A stretch of DNA of 64,000 nucleotides, from IMG/VR virus record IMGVR_UViG_3300046542_000291, positions 62,001 through 126,000 of that record, one strand, 5' to 3'. Positions 11,959 to 61,354 of the stretch are shown one piece after another. How positions within the stretch are numbered: the stretch's first letter is position 1; every line of letters begins with the position of its first letter. The notes beneath the pieces are model-generated. The model worked only from the letters and a program-made list of their open reading frames with translations, was not told the DNA's origin and made no database searches. Made by a program: the position numbers and the translations under genes.

Positions 11959-11967
11959 GTAATGTAG
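11959..11967 (-). promoter_or_regulatory. early promoter variant (CTACATTAC)
   Basis: one mismatch to CTATATTAC; flank AGATCT as at 24532. Confidence 0.55.
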
Positions 11968-39250: not shown

Positions 39251-41032
39251 TTATGCAGCTTCGCGCAGGGTTGCACGAACTTCTTCGAAGGTCACTTCGT
39301 TCGGGAACGTGCCGTCTTTGTAGATCGGACGCAGTTCACCCGAGTGAGTGTCGAGGTCAGCGATTTCGAACTTCTGCTCTTGGAGCAGCTCAAAGTCACC
39401 GGCTTCGTTCTTCACAACCTTCAGGAAGCCCTTGGCCGACTTCTTGTTGGTTTCGCCTTCGGTCTTCGGCGCCTTGAACAGCTCAACGAACACGTCGTCC
39501 ACTTGAACGGCGGTAGCCTTGATGGCGTAGCCGAAGGTGTCACGAGTGTTGTGCTGATAGGTGTACGAACCGATACCCAGAACCCAGTTGCACGAAGCGA
39601 AGCCTTTCTTCATCAGGCGACGCATGATTTCCTGGGTACGTTCCACAGTGATCGAATCACCGTAGATCAGGCCAACACGTTCGTGCAGCACTTTGAAGCC
39701 CTTGTCGGTCATGGTGCCACCGAAAGTGTTCCACAGGCATTCCACCGCACCGATCTGTTCGGCGTTCAGTTCTACCGGAGCCCACAGGTAGCCCAGAGCC
39801 GTGTAGTACTTCTCGGCGTCTTCAGCACTGATCGGATTTTCGTAGCGGGTTGCTTTGTACGTCATGCCGTTCAACAGAACGTACTCGACGTCTTTCGCTT
39901 TGCCGTTGTTGACCAGTTCGCTGAATTCCAGCGAGTTGTGAACTTCCACACCGCAGATGACTTCAACAGGATCACCGGAATCCGGACGGAACACCACTTT
40001 GGCCAGGCCGTTGGCGTCTGGTTGACGAGCCAGGATTTCTTCCTTCAGGGAAGGGGCAACAATGGTCAGGACACCCCAGAAGTCGAAGCTGTCGCAGACC
40101 AGGCTGATGATGCCAGTAGGACACTTGACGGTAATGGCATCCAGGATGAACTGACGCTCGGCCAGCAGTTGCGCTTTGCCGTATGCATCGGGATCGAGGT
40201 CACCACCAGTCAGGCCTTTTTCCAGCAGCCACTTGGTCATGTTGTACAGGATGTTCGAAGTAGCAACGGCGTGTTCGGTAGCACGCACCGATACAGCCAG
40301 GAACTCGACGTCGCTGTTGGCGAAGTACATGTCTTCGGCGTAGTCGATGGCCGGCAGGGTATCGGTACCCACGAAGCTGGTCAGGTGACCGGCGCCAGTA
40401 CGAGCAGCATCTTCAGGACCGGACAGGCCACGGAAGGCGAAGTCATGCCCTTGCAACGCAACGAAGTCACGAGGCGAACCAGTCAGGTCAGCGAAGTGTT
40501 CCAGGATGCGACGGTATTCGTAAGCGATGGTGGCGTTGCAGACCATTTTCCAGATCAGCGACGACATCAGGGTTTCCAGGTAGTTCACTACCCAGAAGAA
40601 TTCCGGTACGGTGTTGTAGATCACGTAGCCCGGAACGTTCATGTTCAGGCGAGAGCCTTCCGGTACCGACAGGATGGTAACCGGTAAGTAACCCAGGTCA
40701 TGCAGTGCTGCCATGGCTTCGATGTCAACCATACCTTCACCGAGGTAGTTCTTCATGCGGCGAGCGTAGCGACGGATCACTTGCTCTTTCGGCTTGCTGA
40801 AGAACGAATCGTGCCACAGGCCGTGAACTTCACGCATCACGCCTTGGATACCGAACCAGACGACTTTGCTATCCCAGAGGTAGGACTGGGACTTGCTGCC
40901 CTTGAACAGACGGTCTGCACGTGGAGTGCCGTTACCGTAGGCGAAGTTGGTGCCGTTCGGGTACAGAGGGCCGTGACCCATTTTGTAACCGTCTGCTGCA
41001 GTCGGGCCAAACAGTTTGAAAGAAGTGCTCAT
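39251..41032 (-). CDS. NAMPT-family phosphoribosyltransferase (probable NARP1 Namat)
   Basis: ADGYKMGH, HDFAFRG, GTDT, ATEH, RPDSGDP, IYGDSIT, GIGSYTYQ, TRDT, KKSAKG; start moved to MSTSF. Confidence 0.9.
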   Translation of the reverse strand: MSTSFKLFGPTAADGYKMGHGPLYPNGTNFAYGNGTPRADRLFKGSKSQSYLWDSKVVWFGIQGVMREVHGLWHDSFFSKPKEQVIRRYARRMKNYLGEGMVDIEAMAALHDLGYLPVTILSVPEGSRLNMNVPGYVIYNTVPEFFWVVNYLETLMSSLIWKMVCNATIAYEYRRILEHFADLTGSPRDFVALQGHDFAFRGLSGPEDAARTGAGHLTSFVGTDTLPAIDYAEDMYFANSDVEFLAVSVRATEHAVATSNILYNMTKWLLEKGLTGGDLDPDAYGKAQLLAERQFILDAITVKCPTGIISLVCDSFDFWGVLTIVAPSLKEEILARQPDANGLAKVVFRPDSGDPVEVICGVEVHNSLEFSELVNNGKAKDVEYVLLNGMTYKATRYENPISAEDAEKYYTALGYLWAPVELNAEQIGAVECLWNTFGGTMTDKGFKVLHERVGLIYGDSITVERTQEIMRRLMKKGFASCNWVLGIGSYTYQHNTRDTFGYAIKATAVQVDDVFVELFKAPKTEGETNKKSAKGFLKVVKNEAGDFELLQEQKFEIADLDTHSGELRPIYKDGTFPNEVTFEEVRATLREAA

Positions 41033-41045
41033 TACTTTGTTTTCC

Positions 41046-41921
41046 TTACGCATTGATCCAGGTGAGTTTGTTATCGACAACACCGTCTGGGCGAGTACTG
41101 CCCTGTGCTGTCGGATGGAACGAGTTGGTGGTGTAGACGTGGTCGTACTTTTCAGTAACCAGGTCGAAACCGTACGAGAAGATCCCGTGCGTTACCAACA
41201 GTTCCAATCGTGCTGGATTATGCTTGCGGATTTCTTCAGCCAGTTGGATGAAGGTCCGTCCACCATCACAGATGTCGTCACAGACCAGCAGTCGTTTGCC
41301 AGTTACATCGGCATCGAACTTGGTCTTGGTGATTTCCATCGTTTCCAGGTCACGCTCTTTAGTAGCCGTGATGTAACCAGCGCAGCCCAGGTGAGCAGCC
41401 AACGCTTTCACTTTCTTGACAGCCCCTGCATCAGGAGCCACCAGCCAGGTATCGTGCAGTTCGTTTGCCGTAGCATCCAACATGTGCACGATGTCAGCCT
41501 GGGTCTTGACGATCACGCGGTTGATCAACGCCGGCGTAGTGTCGCTGTGCGGGTCCAAAATGGTCACACTGACGAACTCACAGAGGTTGATCAACTTCGC
41601 TGCTACCGCAATACCCAACGACTCCCCGGGGTTACACACGCGGTCCTGCCGGGCGTAAGGGACATAAGGGATATATGCGCTTACCGGTACGTCGGGACGA
41701 ATGCGACGGATCGCATCGGTAACGTGCAGTAAAGCGAGGAAGTCAGTTGGGGTACGGAGGTTGGCCATGACTTGAATGTCCATGCAACCGCGGATTTTGT
41801 TGTGGAACTCTTTCGGAATAAGTGGGTTAACTTCCCCACCTTTGAACGTGCTCACGTCAACGATAGTCTGCGCCACTCCCCAGTGGTCGCCATTGCCGCG
41901 TCGGATACTTAAACGAATCAT
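41046..41921 (-). CDS. ribose-phosphate pyrophosphokinase family (probable NARP1 Adps)
   Basis: FKGGE, PYVPYARQDR, DPHS, APDAGA, DDICDGGRTF, VTHGIFS. Confidence 0.9.
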   Translation of the reverse strand: MIRLSIRRGNGDHWGVAQTIVDVSTFKGGEVNPLIPKEFHNKIRGCMDIQVMANLRTPTDFLALLHVTDAIRRIRPDVPVSAYIPYVPYARQDRVCNPGESLGIAVAAKLINLCEFVSVTILDPHSDTTPALINRVIVKTQADIVHMLDATANELHDTWLVAPDAGAVKKVKALAAHLGCAGYITATKERDLETMEITKTKFDADVTGKRLLVCDDICDGGRTFIQLAEEIRKHNPARLELLVTHGIFSYGFDLVTEKYDHVYTTNSFHPTAQGSTRPDGVVDNKLTWINA

Positions 41922-46218: not shown

Positions 46219-47592
46219 TTAAACTGCCACTGGAGCAGGGATATGGGGATGGCTATCGTAACCGACCAATTTAAAGTCGTTGATATCCATGTCCAGAACA
46301 TCACGCTTATTCGGATTTATCCAAATAGTGCACGGCTGTTTTGGTGTACGGGTTTGTTGCAGAGCCACCTGGTCCATGTGGTCCAGATAGATGTGGGCAT
46401 CACCAACTTGATGAATCAGTTCTTCAGCCCAGTAGTTGCACTCATGAGCCAACAGGTGAGTGAGAATCGAGTACTGGGTGAGATTGAAGGGCGCGCCCAA
46501 AAAGATGTCATTGGAACGCATCCAGAACAAACACTTCAATGCACGACGTGGAACCTTCATGCTGTCGAGGTCGAGGTGTTGTTCCTCTTCGGTGCGGTCA
46601 GGAAAGCGGAGCATCTTGCTGAGGTTCATGTACATACCGTACAGAGGCTCCTCAGGATGGTCTGCTGCCTGTTTGTAGATCTCGGCCTGGTGACGATCAT
46701 GGATCTTGTCGTAGATCGCCCAGCGCTCTTCCAGGGACAGCACACGGGTCCAGAACTGAACCATGGCATGGCATGGCGGCAGGGCTTGTTGATCCACGTA
46801 AGCCGGATTCCAGAAACACAGAATGTGACGTCGGGAGTCAGGGCTGTTCTTCAGCGAGTGCTGCAGATCTTTAAACTGGTCGATGGTTCGGGTAATGATG
46901 AACTTACCCTTGTTCCGGCAAAGCTTCTTGTAACCCAGCTTCTGCATCTCCGGCCATTCTTTTGGCGAGATAACGCGGGTGTCTTCCAGGTTACGGATCA
47001 TCTTGCCGTAAACGTGACCCAGAGGACCTTCAGTCACTTCCTGGTCGGAAATACCAATGTGGCGGAAGAAGTCCTTCCACAACGGATGTTCCTTGTCATC
47101 GTGCATTGCCTGGGCATTGTCCGTCGACGTCTCGATCAAATAGTTCGGGATCATCTTGTCGCTACCAGGCACTTCAGTGTAGTTGACGTAAGAATGAAAC
47201 TTCTCGCCAACATTACCAAAGTGAATACCCGCAGGATAACCCTTCAGTTCGATCTCACCCCAACCGAAGTGCTTGCGCTTGTATTGCTTGCGCATTTCAG
47301 CCGCAGTACGAGGACGGTACTTGGCCCCTTCTGGCTTGACCCAGTCATCCCAGATGCCACAGTTGTTGTCTTTCAGGTACTTGACGTTGGTGTCGCCGGA
47401 GAGCACCCACTTGAGTTCGACCTTGTTGTCGTTCTCAGGTACGAACTTTGTCGTTGGTCTGGCTACGGTCCAGTCGGAGATGTCGTAGCGATGCATGGCG
47501 CCGAAGCTGGAGATCGTTCCTGTATTGGTCCGGTCCCCCTTGGCCACGCCGTGCTTCAAAGTGTTTTCCTGGTACTGAAGGTATTGATGCAT
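46219..47592 (-). CDS. thyA: thymidylate synthase (ThyA) with large insertions
   Basis: DRTNTGT, IWDDW, LGHVYG, PDSRR, ALPPCH, RSNDIFLGAPFN, GDAHIYLDH, C-terminal PVAV. Confidence 0.95.
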   Translation of the reverse strand: MHQYLQYQENTLKHGVAKGDRTNTGTISSFGAMHRYDISDWTVARPTTKFVPENDNKVELKWVLSGDTNVKYLKDNNCGIWDDWVKPEGAKYRPRTAAEMRKQYKRKHFGWGEIELKGYPAGIHFGNVGEKFHSYVNYTEVPGSDKMIPNYLIETSTDNAQAMHDDKEHPLWKDFFRHIGISDQEVTEGPLGHVYGKMIRNLEDTRVISPKEWPEMQKLGYKKLCRNKGKFIITRTIDQFKDLQHSLKNSPDSRRHILCFWNPAYVDQQALPPCHAMVQFWTRVLSLEERWAIYDKIHDRHQAEIYKQAADHPEEPLYGMYMNLSKMLRFPDRTEEEQHLDLDSMKVPRRALKCLFWMRSNDIFLGAPFNLTQYSILTHLLAHECNYWAEELIHQVGDAHIYLDHMDQVALQQTRTPKQPCTIWINPNKRDVLDMDINDFKLVGYDSHPHIPAPVAV

Positions 47593-48512: not shown

Positions 48513-49253
48513 TCAATATTTGCCGTGGATGTGGAAGATCAAGCTGATGTTCTCATCGTGACGCAGAGCGATCAGGCCGTGTTCCAGTTCGTAGGTTTGC
48601 TTGTCCATGTCGAATGTGATGAACGTGTGGTCCATCGCAGCGTCGATACGGAAGCGCGCTTTACGTGCATCATCGCTGGCAACCGGAACAACCTGGATGT
48701 CATTGATCAGCGTGGTGCCTTCAAAGACACCTGTCGCCGTAACACGTTCGATAGTAGCTTGCTCATGGGGCTCGATGAAACGAGTTTCCCCCACCAGCAC
48801 ACTGCCGTCGATGGTGAGCTGCCGACGCAGTTCGTCATTGCCGCGATTCTCTGGCAACCGCATGGGTTCCAGGATGAGGTTGACCTGTGCGGTCTTTGGT
48901 CCGTTGTGCATTTGGTTGATGTTCTCGCTTGGTTCCACTTCTACCAACTTTTCCGGGAAGCATGCGCTAACACTAATGCACATCTCGACACCATGTATAT
49001 TGAATACATAGTTGTCTTTTGCAAACCAGGCACTCTCCGACTTATGAATCACATCGGGGTAAATTGGATCGTCGAACATGTTCAGGAAGGTGACTCCCGA
49101 AAGGCCGGTAATGATCCAGCCCTCGGGAATGTTACTGGTGTTGACAACGGCACCGTCACGGGTAATGTCTACCGGGTAGGTGACCAACTGAGCCAGCAGG
49201 TTGGTGTGTGGGTGATACACAACATCAAGACGGTGGTTCTCGGGCTCTTGCAT
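48513..49253 (-). CDS. hypothetical protein, beta-rich paralog family
   Basis: TFITFDMDKQTYEL. Confidence 0.8.
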   Translation of the reverse strand: MQEPENHRLDVVYHPHTNLLAQLVTYPVDITRDGAVVNTSNIPEGWIITGLSGVTFLNMFDDPIYPDVIHKSESAWFAKDNYVFNIHGVEMCISVSACFPEKLVEVEPSENINQMHNGPKTAQVNLILEPMRLPENRGNDELRRQLTIDGSVLVGETRFIEPHEQATIERVTATGVFEGTTLINDIQVVPVASDDARKARFRIDAAMDHTFITFDMDKQTYELEHGLIALRHDENISLIFHIHGKY

Positions 49254-49963
49254 CAGTCGAGTCTCGGTTTGAGGAAGATGGCTTTCGCCGCCCCCACGGC
49301 TTGAATGTGATCGAACAGAGCGCTGTTGCCAACGTTCTGCAAGACCTGCAGTTGTTCTTCGTTGATGGGTGAACCATTCCAGTTGAACCCAGCACGATCC
49401 TTGATGTCCCAGAAGGTTTCCAGGAGACGGTTAGGGATCAAATGCACACAGTGAATAGTAAGCACTTTCTCCGTGGTCGGAAAACGACGAAGGTAGTTGG
49501 TATCCTGCGCATGGAGCGTAGTCCCCACAACAATGGTTTCTACGTTCTCTTCCAACACATTAAGAGGAGTCTCGTAAAACTCCCCACCGCGTGTTTCGTA
49601 CCGACAGCGATAACTGGCCAAAACGTCTTTGTTAACGTAACGGATGTAGTCCTGGATCGGGGTTCCCGTTCCGTCATCCATGGTGCTCTTGGCCTGGATT
49701 TCTTCGGTCGTGTTCAGCGCCATGCGCAGCACGTCGAATGTGTCTTGGCCGGTCATGGTGATAGCCGTGAAGGCGAACTGAATTTTGACGAGTTCCTTGG
49801 AATCTTTGAACGCATCTTCCGGCGCATACAGAATGTGCTGGGCGAAGGTGTCTTGGATTTCGTAGATTTCGCTATCGTTCATCGACACCTCCTTCGTCAG
49901 GCGTGCCAAGTTCAGGAATTCACCAACAGGATTATTGCGAATCCCAGCGAAGAGTTCAATCAT
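49253..49963 (-). CDS. hypothetical protein
   Basis: coupled ORF. Confidence 0.8.
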   Translation of the reverse strand: MIELFAGIRNNPVGEFLNLARLTKEVSMNDSEIYEIQDTFAQHILYAPEDAFKDSKELVKIQFAFTAITMTGQDTFDVLRMALNTTEEIQAKSTMDDGTGTPIQDYIRYVNKDVLASYRCRYETRGGEFYETPLNVLEENVETIVVGTTLHAQDTNYLRRFPTTEKVLTIHCVHLIPNRLLETFWDIKDRAGFNWNGSPINEEQLQVLQNVGNSALFDHIQAVGAAKAIFLKPRLD

Positions 49964-50727
49964 TGTTTACCGCCTTGAAGGAGGGTGAGTTTAGGGGGAC
50001 CCTTATAACGCGAAGGGCCTTTGAATACAGGGGTGGTTGGAAGATCACCGAAGTCCAGCAATGGGCTTGGCATTTCCAGAGCCGCGGAGAGGAAGTCTTC
50101 TTCCGTCCCAGTGAAGCCTTTTGCACGGGCCAGGTCGTAAGCCGACATGTGGTCACCCTTCGAGGCAACCTGCGTAGTGCGTTCTTCGAGCGATGGACGC
50201 TTCATCAACGCATCCCGCACCTGACCAGCCTTTTCACGGAAAGTCGCAGTGAACTTTTTCGGATAAACGTCGTTCGCTGCACCCGGTCCCATGAACGGTG
50301 GGTTACCAATGTCGTCTTTCTGCTCCGGGGTGAATACCGGAAACAGGTCCAGCGGAATACCACCGTTGTTAGCCATCATCTCCAGTTCCGCTTCCACCCC
50401 AGGGAACGGCGCCAGAGTTGTGTGCATTTCGTCCAGTGGAACTTGAACGGCCAGCAGAGAATGCCAAGGGGCTTCCACCTGTTGTACGACACCACCAGAT
50501 TTGCAGCTGAAACTGAAACCTTCGTCGGTGTACTTCAGGTCACGAATGGCCTGCATCGACATGTTGATTACAGAAACCCCGGTGTCATCACAGACGGAGT
50601 TCAGGTATGCGTTGTCGGAATCCCAGGCACGAATCACTACGTTCATGCGCCCGAAACCGTTCTCACCAAACCACTCGTAAAAAGCGTTCAGGATGACGTG
50701 GTTCAGCGAGGTCAAAGGCTTGCTCAT
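49960..50727 (-). CDS. sspB: SspB-like ClpXP adaptor
   Basis: ILNAFYEWFGEN...VINMSMQAIRDL...FSFSCKSGGV...PWHSLLAV parallels SspB LRAFYEWLLDN...VLNIAPRAVGNL...FNARFGG...PLAAVLAI; low-complexity linker; C-terminal PKLTLLQGGK. Confidence 0.75.
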   Translation of the reverse strand: MSKPLTSLNHVILNAFYEWFGENGFGRMNVVIRAWDSDNAYLNSVCDDTGVSVINMSMQAIRDLKYTDEGFSFSCKSGGVVQQVEAPWHSLLAVQVPLDEMHTTLAPFPGVEAELEMMANNGGIPLDLFPVFTPEQKDDIGNPPFMGPGAANDVYPKKFTATFREKAGQVRDALMKRPSLEERTTQVASKGDHMSAYDLARAKGFTGTEEDFLSAALEMPSPLLDFGDLPTTPVFKGPSRYKGPPKLTLLQGGKQ

Positions 50728-50739
50728 GTTTACTCCTAG

Positions 50740-50988
50740 TTAGTTATGTTCTTCAACTGTAGGCTCAAGAATCCACTTGAAGGGAATACCGAGTCTATCG
50801 ACGTACCCCAAAAGGGTTTCCAAACGTACAGCCCCGTCTTCGCGGTTTACTTTGAGGCGGCTATAAGTCTCCCTGCTAATGCAGAGAAGACTGGCCATTT
50901 GCTTGCCGTACAGGCGGTGCTTCTTTTGGTAACTAAACACGGCATCGATCAGCATCTGCTTCACTGCCGGGATTTGGTCACTCAACAT
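50740..50988 (-). CDS. XRE-type helix-turn-helix protein
   Basis: GKQMASLLCISRETYSRL...LETLLGYVDRLG. Confidence 0.7.
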   Translation of the reverse strand: MLSDQIPAVKQMLIDAVFSYQKKHRLYGKQMASLLCISRETYSRLKVNREDGAVRLETLLGYVDRLGIPFKWILEPTVEEHN

Positions 50989-51029: not shown

Positions 51030-51038
51030 GTAATGTAG
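51030..51038 (-). promoter_or_regulatory. early promoter variant (CTACATTAC)
   Basis: one mismatch; upstream TTCAAG context; precedes HTH-sspB operon. Confidence 0.6.
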
Positions 51039-51055
51039 ACTTGAAACTTTTTGCG

Positions 51056-51151
51056 TTAATTCTTGCGGAACAGGCCCAACATACCGGCGACAGCGCCGAG
51101 CATAATGAGGCTACCGATAGCCATCAGACCGTATTGAAAGAAGTCGTGCAT
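51056..51151 (-). CDS. 31-aa single-TM peptide
   Basis: MHDFFQYGLMAIGSLIMLGAVAGMLGLFRKN. Confidence 0.5.
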   Translation of the reverse strand: MHDFFQYGLMAIGSLIMLGAVAGMLGLFRKN

Positions 51152-51154
51152 TGT

Positions 51155-51316
51155 TCACCCGATTGGATAATGGAAGAGGCCGAAGATACCGGCCAAGGTT
51201 AGGACAACCCCGAGAACGTAAACGTCACCGCCGGGGTATTTGTATGGGTTAAAGCAGCCATTCAGGACGACACACAGTACACCCGCAAAGAAGCAGACCA
51301 ATGAAAGCTGGAACAT
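51155..51316 (-). CDS. 53-aa 2-TM peptide
   Basis: MFQLSLVCFFAGVLCVVL...VLGVVLTLAGIFGLF. Confidence 0.5.
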   Translation of the reverse strand: MFQLSLVCFFAGVLCVVLNGCFNPYKYPGGDVYVLGVVLTLAGIFGLFHYPIG

Positions 51317-51510
51317 TCGATATTCACCAAGTAGCCCGAGATAGCGAAGAGGGCAACAGCCGCCCCCATCAAGTAATAAGAGAACGTTCGTAATTCTTTT
51401 AGTTCGTTACGCCCATCATCTCCGTGAGAAGTTACTACCCAGAAGACCATCCCGAAACACAGGCAGATTACCCCGGTGGAAAACATTAGAGCTGTCCAGT
51501 TAATATCCAT
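51262..51510 (-). CDS. small 2-TM membrane protein
   Basis: AGGAG RBS; two hydrophobic segments. Confidence 0.7.
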   Translation of the reverse strand: MDINWTALMFSTGVICLCFGMVFWVVTSHGDDGRNELKELRTFSYYLMGAAVALFAISGYLVNIECSSFHWSASLRVYCVSS

Positions 51511-51536: not shown

Positions 51537-51554
51537 GCCTCCCCGGAGGGAGGC
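51537..51554 (-). terminator. hairpin terminator (UCCG loop variant)
   Basis: GCCTCCCTCCGGGGAGGC. Confidence 0.8.
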
Positions 51555-51561
51555 TTATGTT

Positions 51562-51909
51562 TCAGTATGTCAAAACCACAGCCTTGCCGTAGTCGTTCAT
51601 CATGCAGGAATTGTACGACGCCATGTAGGTGTCCATTGGGGAAAGTTTGTTATTCCACACTGGATCGACGTCTTGGATTACTTTAGGAAGAACACTGTAA
51701 AGAACGTTATCTTTATTCTTCACAACGTAGCCCTTGAGAGCCTGGAGATTTTTACGCCAAGACTCTTCAGTCTCGCCGCGCTGCTTTGCTTCCGTGGTAG
51801 CCTTGGTCATTAGCGCCAAGCCTTCACAGTAGTTCAGATCAGCCATCACCGCTGTAGCCATTGCTTGCATTGGAACTGAGAACAGAACCAGTACAACCAA
51901 AAGCCGCAT
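51562..51909 (-). CDS. secreted protein (signal peptide, Cys pair)
   Basis: MRLLVVLVLFSVPMQAMA; similar layout to 24606 and 25096; start uncertain. Confidence 0.7.
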   Translation of the reverse strand: MRLLVVLVLFSVPMQAMATAVMADLNYCEGLALMTKATTEAKQRGETEESWRKNLQALKGYVVKNKDNVLYSVLPKVIQDVDPVWNNKLSPMDTYMASYNSCMMNDYGKAVVLTY

Positions 51910-51968
51910 TACGTGTGTTAAACATTGCATCACGTTGTACCTTGGTTGAGGGATCAGAATATAGGACA

Positions 51969-52469
51969 CTACTCGGAGTCTTCACCGGACATATAGAAGA
52001 GAGCATTGTTGTGATTAAACCCATCGGTAGCGACACGGAAGATGTAACTCAACCGACTTATTCCGTCACCAATGTAGTCGTATGCGCTGATGCCACAATA
52101 GAGCCGGTTAGGGTTCTTGGCATCCAATGTACTCACCAACGAGTCGATGTACTCCATGGCGGGCACAAAGCCAAACGTTTTCTCGTCCTGTCTCCAAGAG
52201 TCATTCGTTAGGCTGGTAATGTACCGTTCCGTGACGTCATCGCTTTGATCTTGACAGAAGCCTGCAACCGCAGACAAGATGTATAGATCGGGATCGAGGT
52301 CCATGTGTGCATACGTTTCATTAAACGCGTACAACCACTCACCTTTCTCAGCAATGATCTTTTCTAACCACCCGTGTTCAGCCGTACCATTAACGACAAC
52401 GTCTGTAAAGAGCTCAGGGCAAGCTGCCGCAAGATACTCTTTACGAATAATGCGAAACCGTTGAGCCAT
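51969..52469 (-). CDS. hypothetical protein
   Basis: ORF in gene train. Confidence 0.75.
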   Translation of the reverse strand: MAQRFRIIRKEYLAAACPELFTDVVVNGTAEHGWLEKIIAEKGEWLYAFNETYAHMDLDPDLYILSAVAGFCQDQSDDVTERYITSLTNDSWRQDEKTFGFVPAMEYIDSLVSTLDAKNPNRLYCGISAYDYIGDGISRLSYIFRVATDGFNHNNALFYMSGEDSE

Positions 52470-58885: not shown

Positions 58886-59310
58886 CGGAAGTACTCCTTT
58901 CTCGACAACGAATACAACGAAGCATCCAGTTTAGTGAATGCCGCTGTGGTCCGTTCTTCATAGGTATCGATGCGTCGAGCGATCAGGGGATCGGTACAAC
59001 ACACCATACACGTGTTACACAGGACCGTGACCTTGTCAGCATGGAACGAGAGTTTGTGTTCCTCGCATTCCATATCAAAGACAATGTTGGCCATGGTCTT
59101 GCGATGAGCATCGTAGATAGCCGCACGGTCTCGCCGACGTTGCCACCGGACTAGCCAACCATCAAGCCACCCAAGAGGCAGCATGACGTTAAAGGCTGCC
59201 CGTACGTACTCGTAGCACCCCCCAGCGCTATGCTTACGTCTCCACGACTGATACATCTGTTCCCGCTGATACACCCTGCGGGCTATGAAGTTGTTCAGGA
59301 CTTGCGACAT
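58882..59310 (-). CDS. hypothetical protein with Cys/His cluster
   Basis: CEEH...CNTCMVCC; AGGAG RBS. Confidence 0.7.
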   Translation of the reverse strand: MSQVLNNFIARRVYQREQMYQSWRRKHSAGGCYEYVRAAFNVMLPLGWLDGWLVRWQRRRDRAAIYDAHRKTMANIVFDMECEEHKLSFHADKVTVLCNTCMVCCTDPLIARRIDTYEERTTAAFTKLDASLYSLSRKEYFR

Positions 59311-61354
59311 TCACAATCTCCTTCAGGCCGTTTGCATCAAACAGCAAGATGCCCAGGTTAAGTTCCTGAGCTGTTTCTAGTTTGTGTGCAGCGTATTTCG
59401 TACCGAGGACAACCAGGTGCGTTCCTTTCGTAGGCAGACTGGTAATCTTAGCCCCTAAGCTCTTGTAGCCCGCTTCAACCTGCTTGCGAGTAAGCTCCCC
59501 GAACTTACTACCACTTACAACTACCGTCTTACCCTCGAGCTCTGCGGAGACTCGAGGGGGCGGAGCGATCATGGTCTTGATGCAGGTCTTCACGGTTTCG
59601 CACAACAACCGATTACGTGATTCATTGAACCAGGTAATAATAGCTGCTGCTTTTACCTTGCCGATATCCTTAATGGCTTCCAGTTCCTCGAACGATGACT
59701 TTGTGAACGCATCGAAGTTCTGGAAGTACACCGCTAACCGTTCAGCTGTGCCTTCCCCTACCTCGGGAATACACAGCGCTGCGATCACGCGTTCCAATGG
59801 CTGGGTTTCTGCTTTGCGTAGCTCTTTATAAAGCTTATGCCCCATACGCTCGGAATCTAGGAACTGAGCACATTGTCCTTCAGTCCAACCGAACATATCC
59901 CAGAACGGGGTGGAAGAGATACTGGATTGATAGCCCACCAGGCTCTTCGCATTCTCCACGCCGAAGTCACGGATATCCAGAACGTTACGACCCCCTTGGT
60001 AATAGAAGGTCATTGCCAACCGACCAGGACACTGTTCGTTAACGCACGTCAACGTAGTGGCCTTCTTCGGTTGCTTGTCCCGAACGAGTTCCTTCTTACA
60101 GCATGGGCAGTGGGTTGGGATCTCGATGGGCTTAGCCGTCGATGGACGTAATGCCACCAAAGCCTTGATCACCTTCGGAATCACATCCCCCGCACGTTTG
60201 ATGACTATCGTGTCACCGTAGTGCAGATCCAAACGCAACACTTCATCCACCCCATGCAACGTCGGGGAGGAAATGGTAGTGCCGTGAATGAATACCGGGT
60301 CAGTTGCACCCACCGGCGTGATTTGCCCCGTCCGCCCTACCTGCCATTCAACATCATGGAGGATAGTCGGACCTTCCGAGGCTGGGAACTTATAAGCCGT
60401 TGCCCATCGTGGACTACGGTTACGCGAACCCAATTCATCACGGTGCCGTTGGAGGTCAACCTTGAACACAATACCGTCGATCTCGTATTCATCGAAAGAC
60501 GCACGTAGCGCCTTGAAATGATCAAGCATCGTCTGTACTGATTTCTCATCGTGTGACTCAAAGGAATGCAGTCCACACAACTCAGCTACTTCAAAACCGA
60601 AGTCCTGAAGTCTGTTCATCGCGGCACCCCAACCAAAGGGGTCGTCCGCATTGTTGTAGTCGGTGTCGTAAGCCACGAAGGACAACTCACGCGTGCCGGT
60701 TACGGCTGCGTCTTTCTGACGCAAAGAACCAGCTGCGTAATTACGGCAGTTGACAAACGTCTTCTCGCCATCTTTTGCCAACTTGGCATTGATTGCATCG
60801 AAGACATCTTTCTTGACTACTACTTCCCCGCGAACGGAGATTTCTTCTGGGTCACCTTTCTTCCAAGGAATAACCCGAGGAACGAAAGCCACGTGATAGA
60901 TGTTCATTGTAACGTCTTCACCGACGCTACCATCACCACGCGTAGCAGCACGCTTCAGTCGACCATGGTCATATAACAGTTCAACCGCCAGACCGTCAAC
61001 CTTCACTTGCCCCCAGATATTGACCCAACCAACAACATCCGCTACCGACATTGCCCATGCCAATACTTCAGCCGCGTTGAAGGTGTTACCCAACGACAAC
61101 ATTGGAGCTGTGTGCTTTACACGACGGAAGTGGTTTGCTGGAGCATGACCCACCAGGTCGGTAGGTGATTTGTTGTCCCCGTAGAGTTCTTTCAACTCAG
61201 GGTGAGCTGCTTCAATCTCTATCAGCCGACGACGCATTTGATCGTAGACTGGATCTTCCACATCACTCTGGTCGAGGATATAGTAGCTGTAGTCCAGCTT
61301 ACCGATAAAGAGCCGCAGTTTGGCGTACTCTTCTTCGATCTCTTTGGTAGCCAT
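59234..61354 (-). CDS. ligA: NAD-dependent DNA ligase
   Basis: YY..D...DPVYD, PMLSLGN, KVDGLA, TRGDG, RGE, DGIVFK, GRTG, RAGDVIP, Zn finger, HhH, BRCT. Confidence 0.97.
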   Translation of the reverse strand: MATKEIEEEYAKLRLFIGKLDYSYYILDQSDVEDPVYDQMRRRLIEIEAAHPELKELYGDNKSPTDLVGHAPANHFRRVKHTAPMLSLGNTFNAAEVLAWAMSVADVVGWVNIWGQVKVDGLAVELLYDHGRLKRAATRGDGSVGEDVTMNIYHVAFVPRVIPWKKGDPEEISVRGEVVVKKDVFDAINAKLAKDGEKTFVNCRNYAAGSLRQKDAAVTGTRELSFVAYDTDYNNADDPFGWGAAMNRLQDFGFEVAELCGLHSFESHDEKSVQTMLDHFKALRASFDEYEIDGIVFKVDLQRHRDELGSRNRSPRWATAYKFPASEGPTILHDVEWQVGRTGQITPVGATDPVFIHGTTISSPTLHGVDEVLRLDLHYGDTIVIKRAGDVIPKVIKALVALRPSTAKPIEIPTHCPCCKKELVRDKQPKKATTLTCVNEQCPGRLAMTFYYQGGRNVLDIRDFGVENAKSLVGYQSSISSTPFWDMFGWTEGQCAQFLDSERMGHKLYKELRKAETQPLERVIAALCIPEVGEGTAERLAVYFQNFDAFTKSSFEELEAIKDIGKVKAAAIITWFNESRNRLLCETVKTCIKTMIAPPPRVSAELEGKTVVVSGSKFGELTRKQVEAGYKSLGAKITSLPTKGTHLVVLGTKYAAHKLETAQELNLGILLFDANGLKEIVNVASPEQLHSPQGVSAGTDVSVVET

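What the first reader, a model, noticed from the sequence alone, without database searches (positions are those of the whole stretch)
49960..50727. Phage-encoded SspB-like ClpXP adaptor with an altered substrate groove
SspB-like N-domain, long linker with a SAYDLARAKGFTGTEEDFL module (seen beside collagen-like repeats in phage proteins) and a C-terminal PKLTLLQGGK resembling the ClpX-binding tail (E. coli LRVVK). The core is strongly diverged, suggesting retargeting of host ClpXP to new substrates such as defence proteins or the -AA-tailed phage proteins. It follows a variant early promoter and an XRE-HTH gene.
Basis: partly seen in the sequence, partly recalled or inferred. Interest (0 to 1): 0.7.

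Follow-up and report, generated by a model that had tools for sequence, protein, structure and literature searches.

The report
Jumbo-phage SspB-like ClpXP adaptor
A giant Pseudomonas phage of the phiKZ type encodes a diverged copy of the bacterial SspB protein, which normally hands proteins to the ClpXP protease; the gene is real, but relatives in phiKZ, PhiPA3 and 201phi2-1 are already annotated this way and none has a tested function.

Summary
The ORF at 49960..50727 (minus strand, 255 aa) is real and is an SspB homologue. Residues 1-120 match solved SspB structures by sequence (E 2e-4 alone, 1.5e-14 as a family profile). They also match by predicted fold (pLDDT about 96; Foldseek E 1e-7, TM 0.77-0.83).

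A linker of about 118 residues follows. It holds one copy of a phage tail-fibre repeat that occurs at least 9 times in this phage's own 1464-aa collagen-like fibre gene.

The C-terminal PKLTLLQGGKQ aligns column for column with the cellular ClpX-binding tail (GRPSL[KRT]VVK). It is the most conserved part of the phage family. A ClpX N-domain docking prediction gave only weak support.

Only 12 of 39 positions nearly invariant in cellular SspB are kept. The R-F of the ARFGG motif and the ssrA-proximal VPxEY loop are replaced, and these sites are hypervariable among the jumbo-phage homologues. An altered cargo site is therefore plausible but untested.

The family sits at a syntenic locus in phiKZ (gp232), PhiPA3 (gp270, annotated SspB-like in the public record), 201phi2-1 (gp347) and others. 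[quoted passage not shown]

Verdict: a new, divergent member of a known but uncharacterised kind. Retargeting to defence proteins remains speculation.

The parts
49960..50727 (-). SspB-like gene, 255 aa (P0001)
   Evidence: ORF list and translation. Homology to SspB.
50368..50727 (-). Residues 1-120: SspB substrate-binding-domain fold. It comprises helix 8-23, a beta-sandwich, and a clade-specific extra helix 111-120 after the invariant P109.
   Evidence: AF2 pLDDT is 96-98 over residues 11-110. The 13 best Foldseek PDB hits are all SspB, E 1e-7, TM 0.77-0.83. P87 and P109 are invariant in the clade.
50491..50505 (-). CKSGG, in place of the canonical ARFGG motif (R to K76, F to S77)
   Evidence: R and F are 100% conserved in 120 cellular SspB and 91%/82% in the short SspB group. 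In the jumbo clade they are kept in only 22%/17%, with entropy 2.7-3.0 bits.
50593..50610 (-). AYLNSV loop, in place of the canonical V-P-x-E-Y loop
   Evidence: PDB 1twb_A ('SspB disulfide crosslinked to an ssrA tag') differs from wild-type 1ou9_A by Tyr to Cys in this loop. That residue therefore lies next to bound ssrA. It aligns with S44/V45 here.
50014..50367 (-). Linker, residues 121-238, mostly predicted disordered; about 2.5 times longer than in cellular SspB
   Evidence: pLDDT is 43-57 over residues 121-190. Alignment A2.
50077..50145 (-). Tail-fibre repeat module, residues 195-217, predicted as a two-helix hairpin
   Evidence: pLDDT 83-91, helices 196-202 and 209-217. Multi-copy matches occur in collagen/tail-fibre proteins. 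At least 9 copies lie in this phage's own 1464-aa ORF.
50038..50064 (-). PLLDFGDLP motif, conserved in most jumbo-clade homologues, function unknown
   Evidence: Alignments A1 and A2. The motif is absent from cellular SspB.
49963..50013 (-). C-terminal tail SRYKGPPKLTLLQGGKQ: XB-like, putative ClpX N-domain tether
   Evidence: It aligns with the cellular GRPSL[KRT][VI]VK tails. G252, G253 and I250 are the invariant or near-invariant residues of the clade. It is the only ORF in the genome with such an end. Docking to the ClpX N-domain got weak support: 0.38 against 0.01 for the best control.
50740..50988 (-). Upstream 82-aa gene, weakly XRE/HTH-like; its stop is 9 nt before the SspB-like start
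   Evidence: Pfam HTH_3 E 0.0065, below the curated cut-off. PHROG 18318 HTH 8.9e-4. PDB CylR2/HipB E 0.4-0.7.
51030..51037 (-). TACATTAC, a candidate variant of the phage's TATATTAC promoter-like motif, 42 nt upstream of the HTH gene's ATG
   Evidence: Function as a promoter is inferred.
49253..49963 (-). Downstream 236-aa gene of unknown function; its start overlaps the SspB-like stop (ATGA)
   Evidence: The same 4-nt overlap and a weak full-length homologue occur in Psa21 (pairwise E 5e-7) and RVTF4.

Best explanation
The gene encodes a cytoplasmic, probably dimeric, SspB-family proteolytic adaptor of a phiKZ-like jumbo phage.

The N-terminal domain (residues 1-120) has the SspB peptide-binding fold. 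A long flexible linker follows. The extreme C-terminus (P-K-L-T-L-L, then QGGKQ) is the counterpart of the XB motif, by which cellular SspB tethers itself to the zinc-binding N-domain of ClpX.

The phage has no ClpX or ClpP of its own, so the protein would act on host ClpXP. It is probably transcribed with the upstream HTH gene from an early-type phage promoter.

The residues that are invariant in cellular SspB are largely replaced here and vary greatly among the phage homologues. According to the literature, those residues make up the dimer interface and the ssrA groove. The cargo is therefore most likely not, or not only, the ssrA tag.

Shown: fold, homology, tail alignment, family distribution. 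Inferred: ClpX binding, dimerisation, delivery of cargo, early expression, changed specificity.
For: Fold and homology. In addition, 28 of 36 aligned relatives hit Pfam SspB, best 3e-36.

Tail: the alignment puts [KR]P.LT[VL]I.GGK[KA] of the phage clade on GRPSL[KRT][VI]VK of cellular SspB. The tail is the best conserved segment of the clade. No other ORF in the genome has such an end.

Docking: residues 216-255 were docked to two copies of P. aeruginosa ClpX residues 1-62. The result was 'weak support': score 0.38, best of 3 controls 0.01. That mark was reached by 51 of 78 solved complexes and 2 of 108 mismatched pairs. At 0.60 or under it was reached by only 5 of the 78 solved complexes and by all 4 mismatches that passed (of 180). 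The runs agree in at least 64% of contacts, and the partner's pLDDT is at least 45.

Host precedent: the P. aeruginosa SspB tail (residues 128-135) is needed for ClpX binding by BLI (PMC13251409).

Protease source: no ClpP or ClpX zinc-finger was found in the complete phage genome.

Localisation of relatives: RAY gp039 (SspB homologue) and phiKZ gp232 are diffuse in the cytoplasm, outside the phage nucleus. gp232 is detected in infected cells.

Groove change: 12 of 39 canonical near-invariant positions are kept. The R-F of ARFGG and the VPxEY loop are replaced and hypervariable. In cellular SspB only the dimer interface and the ssrA groove are highly conserved (PMC9963277).
Against: Family scores are far below the curated cut-offs: Pfam 15.5 against 27 bits, and NCBIfam 29.9 against 191 bits. 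The protein is therefore not an SspB equivalog.

The tail carries a 4-5-residue extension (QGGKQ) after the XB-like core, whereas E. coli SspB ends at the core.

The docking score is weak. It may also reflect the model's memory of the solved ClpX-XB complex.

No experiment on any jumbo-phage homologue shows ClpX binding or stimulated degradation. ClpX was not reported as a partner of phiKZ gp232 in the co-fractionation study.

Hypervariability of the groove could also mean relaxed selection rather than retargeting.
Confidence: 0.5

Rival explanations
1. It keeps the ancestral job. It binds the host ssrA tag and boosts ClpXP clearance of ssrA-tagged fragments, which may rise when the phage destroys host mRNA. 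That would recycle amino acids and free ribosomes.
For: It has the same fold and the same three-part architecture. N55, A60, F73, G78-G79 and P87 of the conserved core are retained.
Against: 27 of 39 canonical near-invariant positions are changed. These include the R-F of ARFGG and the ssrA-proximal Tyr loop. These positions differ even among close phage homologues, although the Pseudomonas ssrA tag they would all face is the same. The host already has SspB.
Confidence: 0.2
2. It is a decoy or blocker. The bivalent tails occupy the ClpX N-domains and shut out host SspB and other N-domain-dependent substrates. This would protect phage proteins or damp the AlgU/MucA stress response. No cargo is delivered.
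For: The tail is the most conserved part, while the cargo site is hypervariable. A competitive-inhibitor idea was proposed for the SspB of phage pf16 from modelling (PMC5587285).
Against: The whole folded domain, its N-terminal helix and a clade-specific extra helix are conserved and confidently folded. A pure tail decoy would not need them, except for dimerisation.
Confidence: 0.15
3. The SspB fold and the tail serve a partner other than ClpX. One candidate is a phage assembly or the nucleus shell, with which phiKZ gp232 co-fractionated. Another is the fibre protein, which shares the linker module.
For: phiKZ gp232 was among six proteins enriched with the shell fraction in SEC-MS (PMC10449902). 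The linker module is shared with the phage's own 1464-aa fibre-like ORF. The PLLDFG motif is conserved and unexplained.
Against: The tagged gp232 was diffuse, not on the shell. The tail aligns with bona fide ClpX-binding tails through a continuum of intermediate sequences.
Confidence: 0.1

Closest known systems
Cellular SspB (ClpXP protease specificity-enhancing factor; E. coli and H. influenzae structures 1OX9, 1OU8, 1YFN, 8ET3; P. aeruginosa PA4427)
   Same: The substrate-binding-domain fold matches. The N-terminal helix has the A-F-Y-E-W pattern. The core residues N55, A60, F73, GG and P87 are kept. A disordered linker is present. The C-terminal P-x-L-x-hydrophobic-hydrophobic motif is in the position of the XB tail.
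   Different: Identity is 22-24%, and scores are below the family cut-offs. The RPY, VPxEY, ARF and IYAxENGxG signatures are lost. The linker is about 118 residues, against about 45, and holds a folded tail-fibre module and a PLLDFG motif. The tail is extended by QGGKQ. An extra helix lies at residues 111-120.
SspB-like proteins of phiKZ-like jumbo phages: phiKZ gp232, PhiPA3 gp270, 201phi2-1 gp347, Psa21_299, RVTF4 XDJ14923, Phabio_349, HPP-Temi CDS0151
   Same: They occupy the same locus, between the gp229 homologue and thymidylate synthase. They share the three-part architecture and the same tail, P.LT[VL]I.GGK[KA]. Most also have the PLLDFG motif.
   Different: Identity is only 23-31%. Among those aligned, the tail-fibre module is seen only here and in one metagenomic relative (P0091). 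The downstream partner gene is shared only with Psa21 and RVTF4; PhiPA3 and HPP-Temi have a different downstream gene, which the PhiPA3 record notes as similar to a histone macroH2A1 C-terminal (macro-type) domain.
Erwinia phage RAY gp039 ('putative SspB-like ClpXP adaptor', Prichard et al. 2023) and P. putida phage pf16 gp18 SspB
   Same: Both are phage-encoded SspB homologues. RAY gp039 is cytoplasmic in a nucleus-forming phage.
   Different: They were not detected by direct sequence search from this protein. pf16 gp18 is described as close to the host SspB, so it looks like a recent capture, not this diverged clade. No tail comparison was made here.
Phage tail-fibre repeat G-(L/K)-S-A-Y-E-(I/V)-A-x-x-x-G-F-x-G-T-x-x-x-W-L (PHROGs 22483, 19976, 25979; weak likeness to Pfam DUF2934)
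   Same: Residues 195-217 match the repeat consensus almost position for position.
   Different: Here it is a single copy inside a protease-adaptor linker. It has no flanking collagen triplets, and F replaces W before the final L.

Membership tests
SspB (Pfam PF04386 / NCBIfam ClpXP specificity-enhancing factor) | Sequence score above the curated family threshold | tested here: not met
   Pfam gives 15.5 bits against a cut-off of 27. The best NCBIfam equivalog gives 29.9 bits against 191. Homology is nevertheless significant: PDB phmmer E 1.9e-4, clade profile 1.5e-14.
SspB (Pfam PF04386 / NCBIfam ClpXP specificity-enhancing factor) | SspB substrate-binding-domain fold | tested here: met
   AF2 pLDDT is about 96 over residues 11-110. 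The 13 best Foldseek hits are all SspB, E 1e-7, TM 0.77-0.83.
SspB (Pfam PF04386 / NCBIfam ClpXP specificity-enhancing factor) | Homodimer through the N-terminal helix | not testable with these tools
   Helix 8-23 is present and A15 and W19 are conserved. No oligomer prediction was run.
SspB (Pfam PF04386 / NCBIfam ClpXP specificity-enhancing factor) | Flexible linker between the domain and the tail | tested here: met
   pLDDT is 43-57 over residues 121-190. The linker is longer than in cellular SspB and holds one small folded module.
SspB (Pfam PF04386 / NCBIfam ClpXP specificity-enhancing factor) | C-terminal XB motif that binds the ClpX N-domain | tested here: inconclusive
   The motif aligns with cellular tails. 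The docking prediction gave weak support: 0.38 against 0.01 for the best control, with the caveats. No binding measurement exists.
SspB (Pfam PF04386 / NCBIfam ClpXP specificity-enhancing factor) | Conserved ssrA-binding groove | tested here: not met
   12 of 39 canonical near-invariant positions are kept. The ARF motif becomes CKS, and the VPxEY loop (Tyr crosslinkable to ssrA in 1TWB) becomes AYLNSV. The full list of groove residues could not be obtained, so this is a proxy test.
SspB (Pfam PF04386 / NCBIfam ClpXP specificity-enhancing factor) | Stimulates ClpXP degradation of bound cargo | not testable with these tools
   This needs biochemistry.
Jumbo-phage SspB-like clade (phiKZ gp232 / PhiPA3 gp270 type) | Syntenic position, three-part architecture and a P.LT[VL]I.GGK tail | tested here: met
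   The window has a gp229 homologue at 51562..51969 and thymidylate synthase at 46219..47592.
XRE-type HTH regulators (upstream gene) | HTH_3 domain above threshold | tested here: inconclusive
   Pfam gives 16.9 bits against a cut-off of 23. PHROG HTH hits at 8.9e-4. PDB hits CylR2/HipB are at E 0.4-0.7.

The most novel reading that the evidence does not exclude
The jumbo-phage SspB-like proteins are a fast-evolving family of hijacking adaptors. A conserved tail plugs into host ClpX, while a hypervariable peptide groove is retuned, phage by phage, to send particular host proteins to ClpXP early in infection. Such targets could include immunity or stress-response factors. This would be a bacterial-virus counterpart of the viral ubiquitin-ligase adaptors of eukaryotes.
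Probability: 0.22. Interest if true: 0.7.

Novelty: new member of a known kind. Interest (0 to 1): 0.35.

Why it matters
Phage-directed proteolysis of host proteins through a hijacked host AAA+ protease is barely documented. A widespread family fits the profile of a takeover or counter-defence device: it is present in phiKZ, PhiPA3 and 201phi2-1, it has a conserved ClpX-type tail, and its cargo site is hypervariable. It can be tested directly in laboratory phages such as phiKZ.

As it stands, the window only adds a divergent member to a family that databases and one paper already call SspB-like. Three modest additions come from this work. First, the phage-type tail consensus is recognised and shown to be continuous with the cellular XB motif. 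Second, the canonical groove invariants are shown to be hypervariable in the clade. Third, a tail-fibre repeat from the phage's own fibre gene sits inside the linker.

Tried and rejected
- The word-indexed homologue search with the protein found only itself. The exhaustive representative search was needed instead.
- Near-identity DNA search in phage records matched only a 57-280-bp stretch in the gp229 homologue. No close sequenced relative exists in that collection.
- No paper giving the full list of ssrA-contacting SspB residues could be found or read. Conservation and the 1TWB cysteine position were used as proxies.
- Literature searches for functional data on phage SspB-like proteins found only RAY gp039, pf16 gp18 and the phiKZ proteomics paper. 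Several 'SspB' hits were the unrelated SspBCDE defence system.
- The phiKZ co-fractionation supplements list gp232 and ClpX but give no link between them.
- No tmRNA or tRNA lies in the window, so nothing supports a phage-specific tag system.
- For the downstream 236-aa gene, Pfam, PHROGs, tblastn against phages and the Atlas search all gave nothing usable.
- The module's DNA has no similarity to the fibre gene copies. A recent intragenomic copy is therefore rejected.
- The Pfam HVO_2928_N hit (E 0.16) and the DasR PDB hits (E above 1) in the linker were dismissed as noise.

Full report
**What is there.** The window is bases 62001-126000 of a complete 310,396-bp virus record with direct terminal repeats. 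On the minus strand, 49960..50727 is an open frame of 255 codons.

The frame starts 9 nt after the stop of an 82-codon gene (50740..50988). It ends in a TGA that overlaps the ATG of the next gene (49253..49963).

The genome is of the phiKZ type. A short stretch in the 135-codon gene 51562..51969 is 91% identical to phiKZ gp229 and its homologues in 49 Pseudomonas jumbo phages. Thymidylate synthase lies downstream at 46219..47592. Between these two landmarks, phiKZ, PhiPA3, 201phi2-1, Psa21, RVTF4, Phabio, HPP-Temi and BRkr all carry a homologue of the gene in question.

**The N-terminal domain is an SspB domain.**
- Pfam SspB is hit only below threshold (E 0.018, 15.5 bits against 27). PHROG 8945 'SspB-like' is hit at 3.6e-4.
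- phmmer against all PDB sequences returns SspB for the ten best hits. The best is E 1.9e-4 over residues 5-107.
- Nine NCBIfam 'ClpXP protease specificity-enhancing factor' models hit at 4e-7 to 1e-2, all far below their equivalog cut-offs.
- An exhaustive search of 1.8 billion representatives found about 35 SspB-like proteins of 135-318 aa. Of 36 aligned members, 28 hit Pfam SspB, best 3e-36.
- A profile of the 18 jumbo-phage-type members hits the solved SspB chains at 1.5e-14.
- AlphaFold2 on that alignment gives pLDDT 96-98 for residues 11-110. Foldseek against the PDB returns SspB for the 13 best hits (E about 1e-7, TM by target 0.77-0.83), then the alpha-proteobacterial SspB orthologues.
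- In the viral structure library, the best hits are PhiPA3 gp270, the phiKZ-like PA7 protein, Phabio, Noxifer 'stringent starvation protein B', Psa21, 201phi2-1 and several Erwinia, Aeromonas and Vibrio phage proteins.

**The tail.** In the alignment of phage-type, short and canonical SspB proteins, the C-termini fall into one block. 120 cellular SspBs end in GRPSL[KRT][VI]VK. A group of about 140-aa proteins ends in P.L[STRC][VI]VK.

The jumbo-phage clade ends in [KR]P.LT[VL]I[QK]GGK[KA]. The window protein ends in PPKLTLLQGGKQ, phiKZ gp232 in PKLTVIKGGKK, and 201phi2-1 gp347 in a looser version.

Within the clade, the only invariant columns are P87, P109, G252 and G253, with A60, Y66 and I250 nearly so. 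The tail is therefore the best conserved segment. No other ORF of the genome ends this way.

In P. aeruginosa, replacing SspB residues 128-135 weakens ClpX binding (PMC13251409). In E. coli, the C-terminal segment binds the ClpX N-domain (PMC9963277).

A docking prediction used residues 216-255 and two copies of P. aeruginosa ClpX 1-62. It gave 'weak support':
- Score 0.38, best of 3 controls 0.01.
- The mark was reached by 51 of 78 solved complexes and 2 of 108 mismatched pairs.
- At 0.60 or under it was reached by only 5 of those 78 solved complexes and by all 4 mismatches that passed (of 180).
- The runs agree in at least 64% of contacts, and the partner's pLDDT is at least 45.

A like complex has been solved, so the pass may reflect memory of it. 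I treat ClpX tethering as well motivated but unproven. The phage has no ClpP or ClpX zinc-finger of its own, so the target would be the host enzyme.

**The cargo site.** Identity to solved SspBs is 22-24%. Of 39 positions that are at least 95% conserved in 122 cellular SspBs, the window protein keeps 12: A15, W19, N23, G50, V53, N55, A60, L64, F73, G78, G79 and P87. The jumbo clade as a whole keeps 29%.

The R-F of the ARFGG motif is kept in 100% of cellular SspBs and in 91%/82% of the short group. In the jumbo clade it is kept in only 22%/17%, with entropy 2.7-3.0 bits. Here the motif is CKSGG.

The IYAxENGxG segment is wholly replaced.

The PDB sequence of 1TWB ('SspB disulfide crosslinked to an ssrA degradation tag') differs from wild-type H. 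influenzae SspB by Tyr to Cys in the VPVEY loop. That tyrosine therefore lies beside the bound tag. The loop is AYLNSV here, and its proline is leucine in 15 of 18 clade members.

The cryo-EM paper on SspB-ClpXP states that only the dimer interface and the ssrA groove of SspB are highly conserved (PMC9963277). Loss and hypervariability of the canonical invariants therefore points to a changed, and changing, binding site. It cannot distinguish retargeting from relaxed selection. I could not obtain the full list of contact residues.

**The linker.** Residues 121-238 are mostly low-confidence, apart from a two-helix unit at 196-217 (pLDDT 83-91).

About 120 of the 157 significant representative hits are large proteins that match only this stretch, with up to 19 copies each. 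Those examined carry collagen triple-helix repeats and hit tail-fibre PHROGs at E down to 1e-200. Examples show the consensus GLSAYE[IV]A...GF.GTE.EWL between G-X-Y runs.

The same phage encodes a 1464-codon ORF (genome 199384-203775, outside the window). It has at least 9 copies of the module and 13 collagen-like runs. A neighbouring 205-codon ORF has one copy. There is no DNA similarity between these copies and the one in the linker, so the copy is not recent.

One metagenomic clade member (P0091) has a similar module at the same place. Its role in an adaptor is unknown.

A second motif, PLLDFG(D/H)xxG (residues 222-230), is conserved in most clade members and absent from cellular SspB. It is unexplained.

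**Expression context.** TATATTAC occurs 7 times in the window, always on the minus strand (0.47 expected). It has a shared extended context: a T-rich run, then tttaaaagcc before the motif and gtgaat after it.

From my own recollection, this resembles the early-promoter element described for phiKZ; I did not verify that here.

The site before the HTH gene (51030-51037) reads TACATTAC and has partly similar flanks. One-mismatch matches as a class are at chance level, so this is a candidate only.

The upstream gene is weakly HTH-like in three libraries.

For relatives, phiKZ gp232 was detected in infected cells, was enriched in a shell fraction, and was diffuse in the cytoplasm as an mNeonGreen fusion (PMC10449902). 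[quoted passage not shown]

**Known or new.** The PhiPA3 record notes gp270 as similar to SspB. RefSeq names 201phi2-1 gp347 'SspB domain-containing protein'. RVTF4, Viktualia and Noxifer carry SspB names. PHROG 8945 is named SspB-like. Prichard et al. discuss RAY gp039, and Magill et al. discuss pf16 gp18.

No functional test of any of these was found. The window protein is thus a divergent new member of a known, uncharacterised kind.

**Mechanism and odds.**
- Most likely (about 0.5): a host-ClpXP adaptor tethered by the XB-like tail, with a cargo preference different from ssrA.
- About 0.2: it retains ssrA delivery.
- About 0.15: it is an N-domain decoy.
- About 0.1: it serves a non-ClpX partner.

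No tmRNA lies in the window.

Noticed in passing
window 49253..49963 (-): The 236-aa gene of unknown function overlaps the SspB-like stop by ATGA. Psa21 and RVTF4 have a weak full-length homologue in the same overlapped position (pairwise E 5e-7 to Psa21_300). This may be a translationally coupled partner. Pfam, PHROG, phage tblastn and Atlas searches gave no lead.
   Followed up: partly
window 50038..50064 (-), residues 222-230: The motif PLLDFG(D/H)xxG is conserved 10-15 residues before the tail in most jumbo-phage SspB-like proteins and is absent from cellular SspB. It may be a second docking site of unknown partner.
   Followed up: no
G000:C1:199384-203775 (-) and 204436-205050 (-), outside the window: The phage's own 1464-codon collagen-like fibre ORF holds at least 9 copies of the repeat found once in the SspB-like linker. 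A neighbouring 205-codon ORF holds one more.
   Followed up: partly
window 3508, 16728, 24532, 32340, 42589, 56234, 58654 (all minus strand): There are seven exact TATATTAC sites with a shared extended context, usually just after a T-rich stretch. They look like this phage's set of early-type promoters. TACATTAC variants lie at 11959 and 51030 with similar flanks.
   Followed up: partly
window 51041..51510 (-): A run of three very small hydrophobic ORFs (about 31, 53 and 82 codons; the last two overlap in different frames) lies between a terminator-like hairpin (51537-51554) and the candidate promoter. They are probably small membrane proteins.
   Followed up: no
window 46219..47592 (-): The thymidylate synthase is 457 aa, well over the length of the PHROG profile it matches end to end (335 positions), so it carries large insertions. 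Its homologues are misnamed in public records: 'cell division protein FtsH' in Psa21 and 'mitochondrial respiratory chain complex III assembly protein' in RVTF4.
   Followed up: no
L003 5096-5848 (PhiPA3 gp271); L001 5131-5880 (HPP-Temi): In PhiPA3 and the HPP-Temi group, the gene after the SspB-like gene is different. The PhiPA3 record notes it as similar to the C-terminal domain of histone macroH2A1 (a macro-type domain). It is not the 236-aa type seen here.
   Followed up: no
window 39251..41083 (-) and 59234..61354 (-): Nicotinamide phosphoribosyltransferase and NAD-dependent DNA ligase genes flank the region. This indicates a phage-encoded NAD salvage and use module.
   Followed up: no
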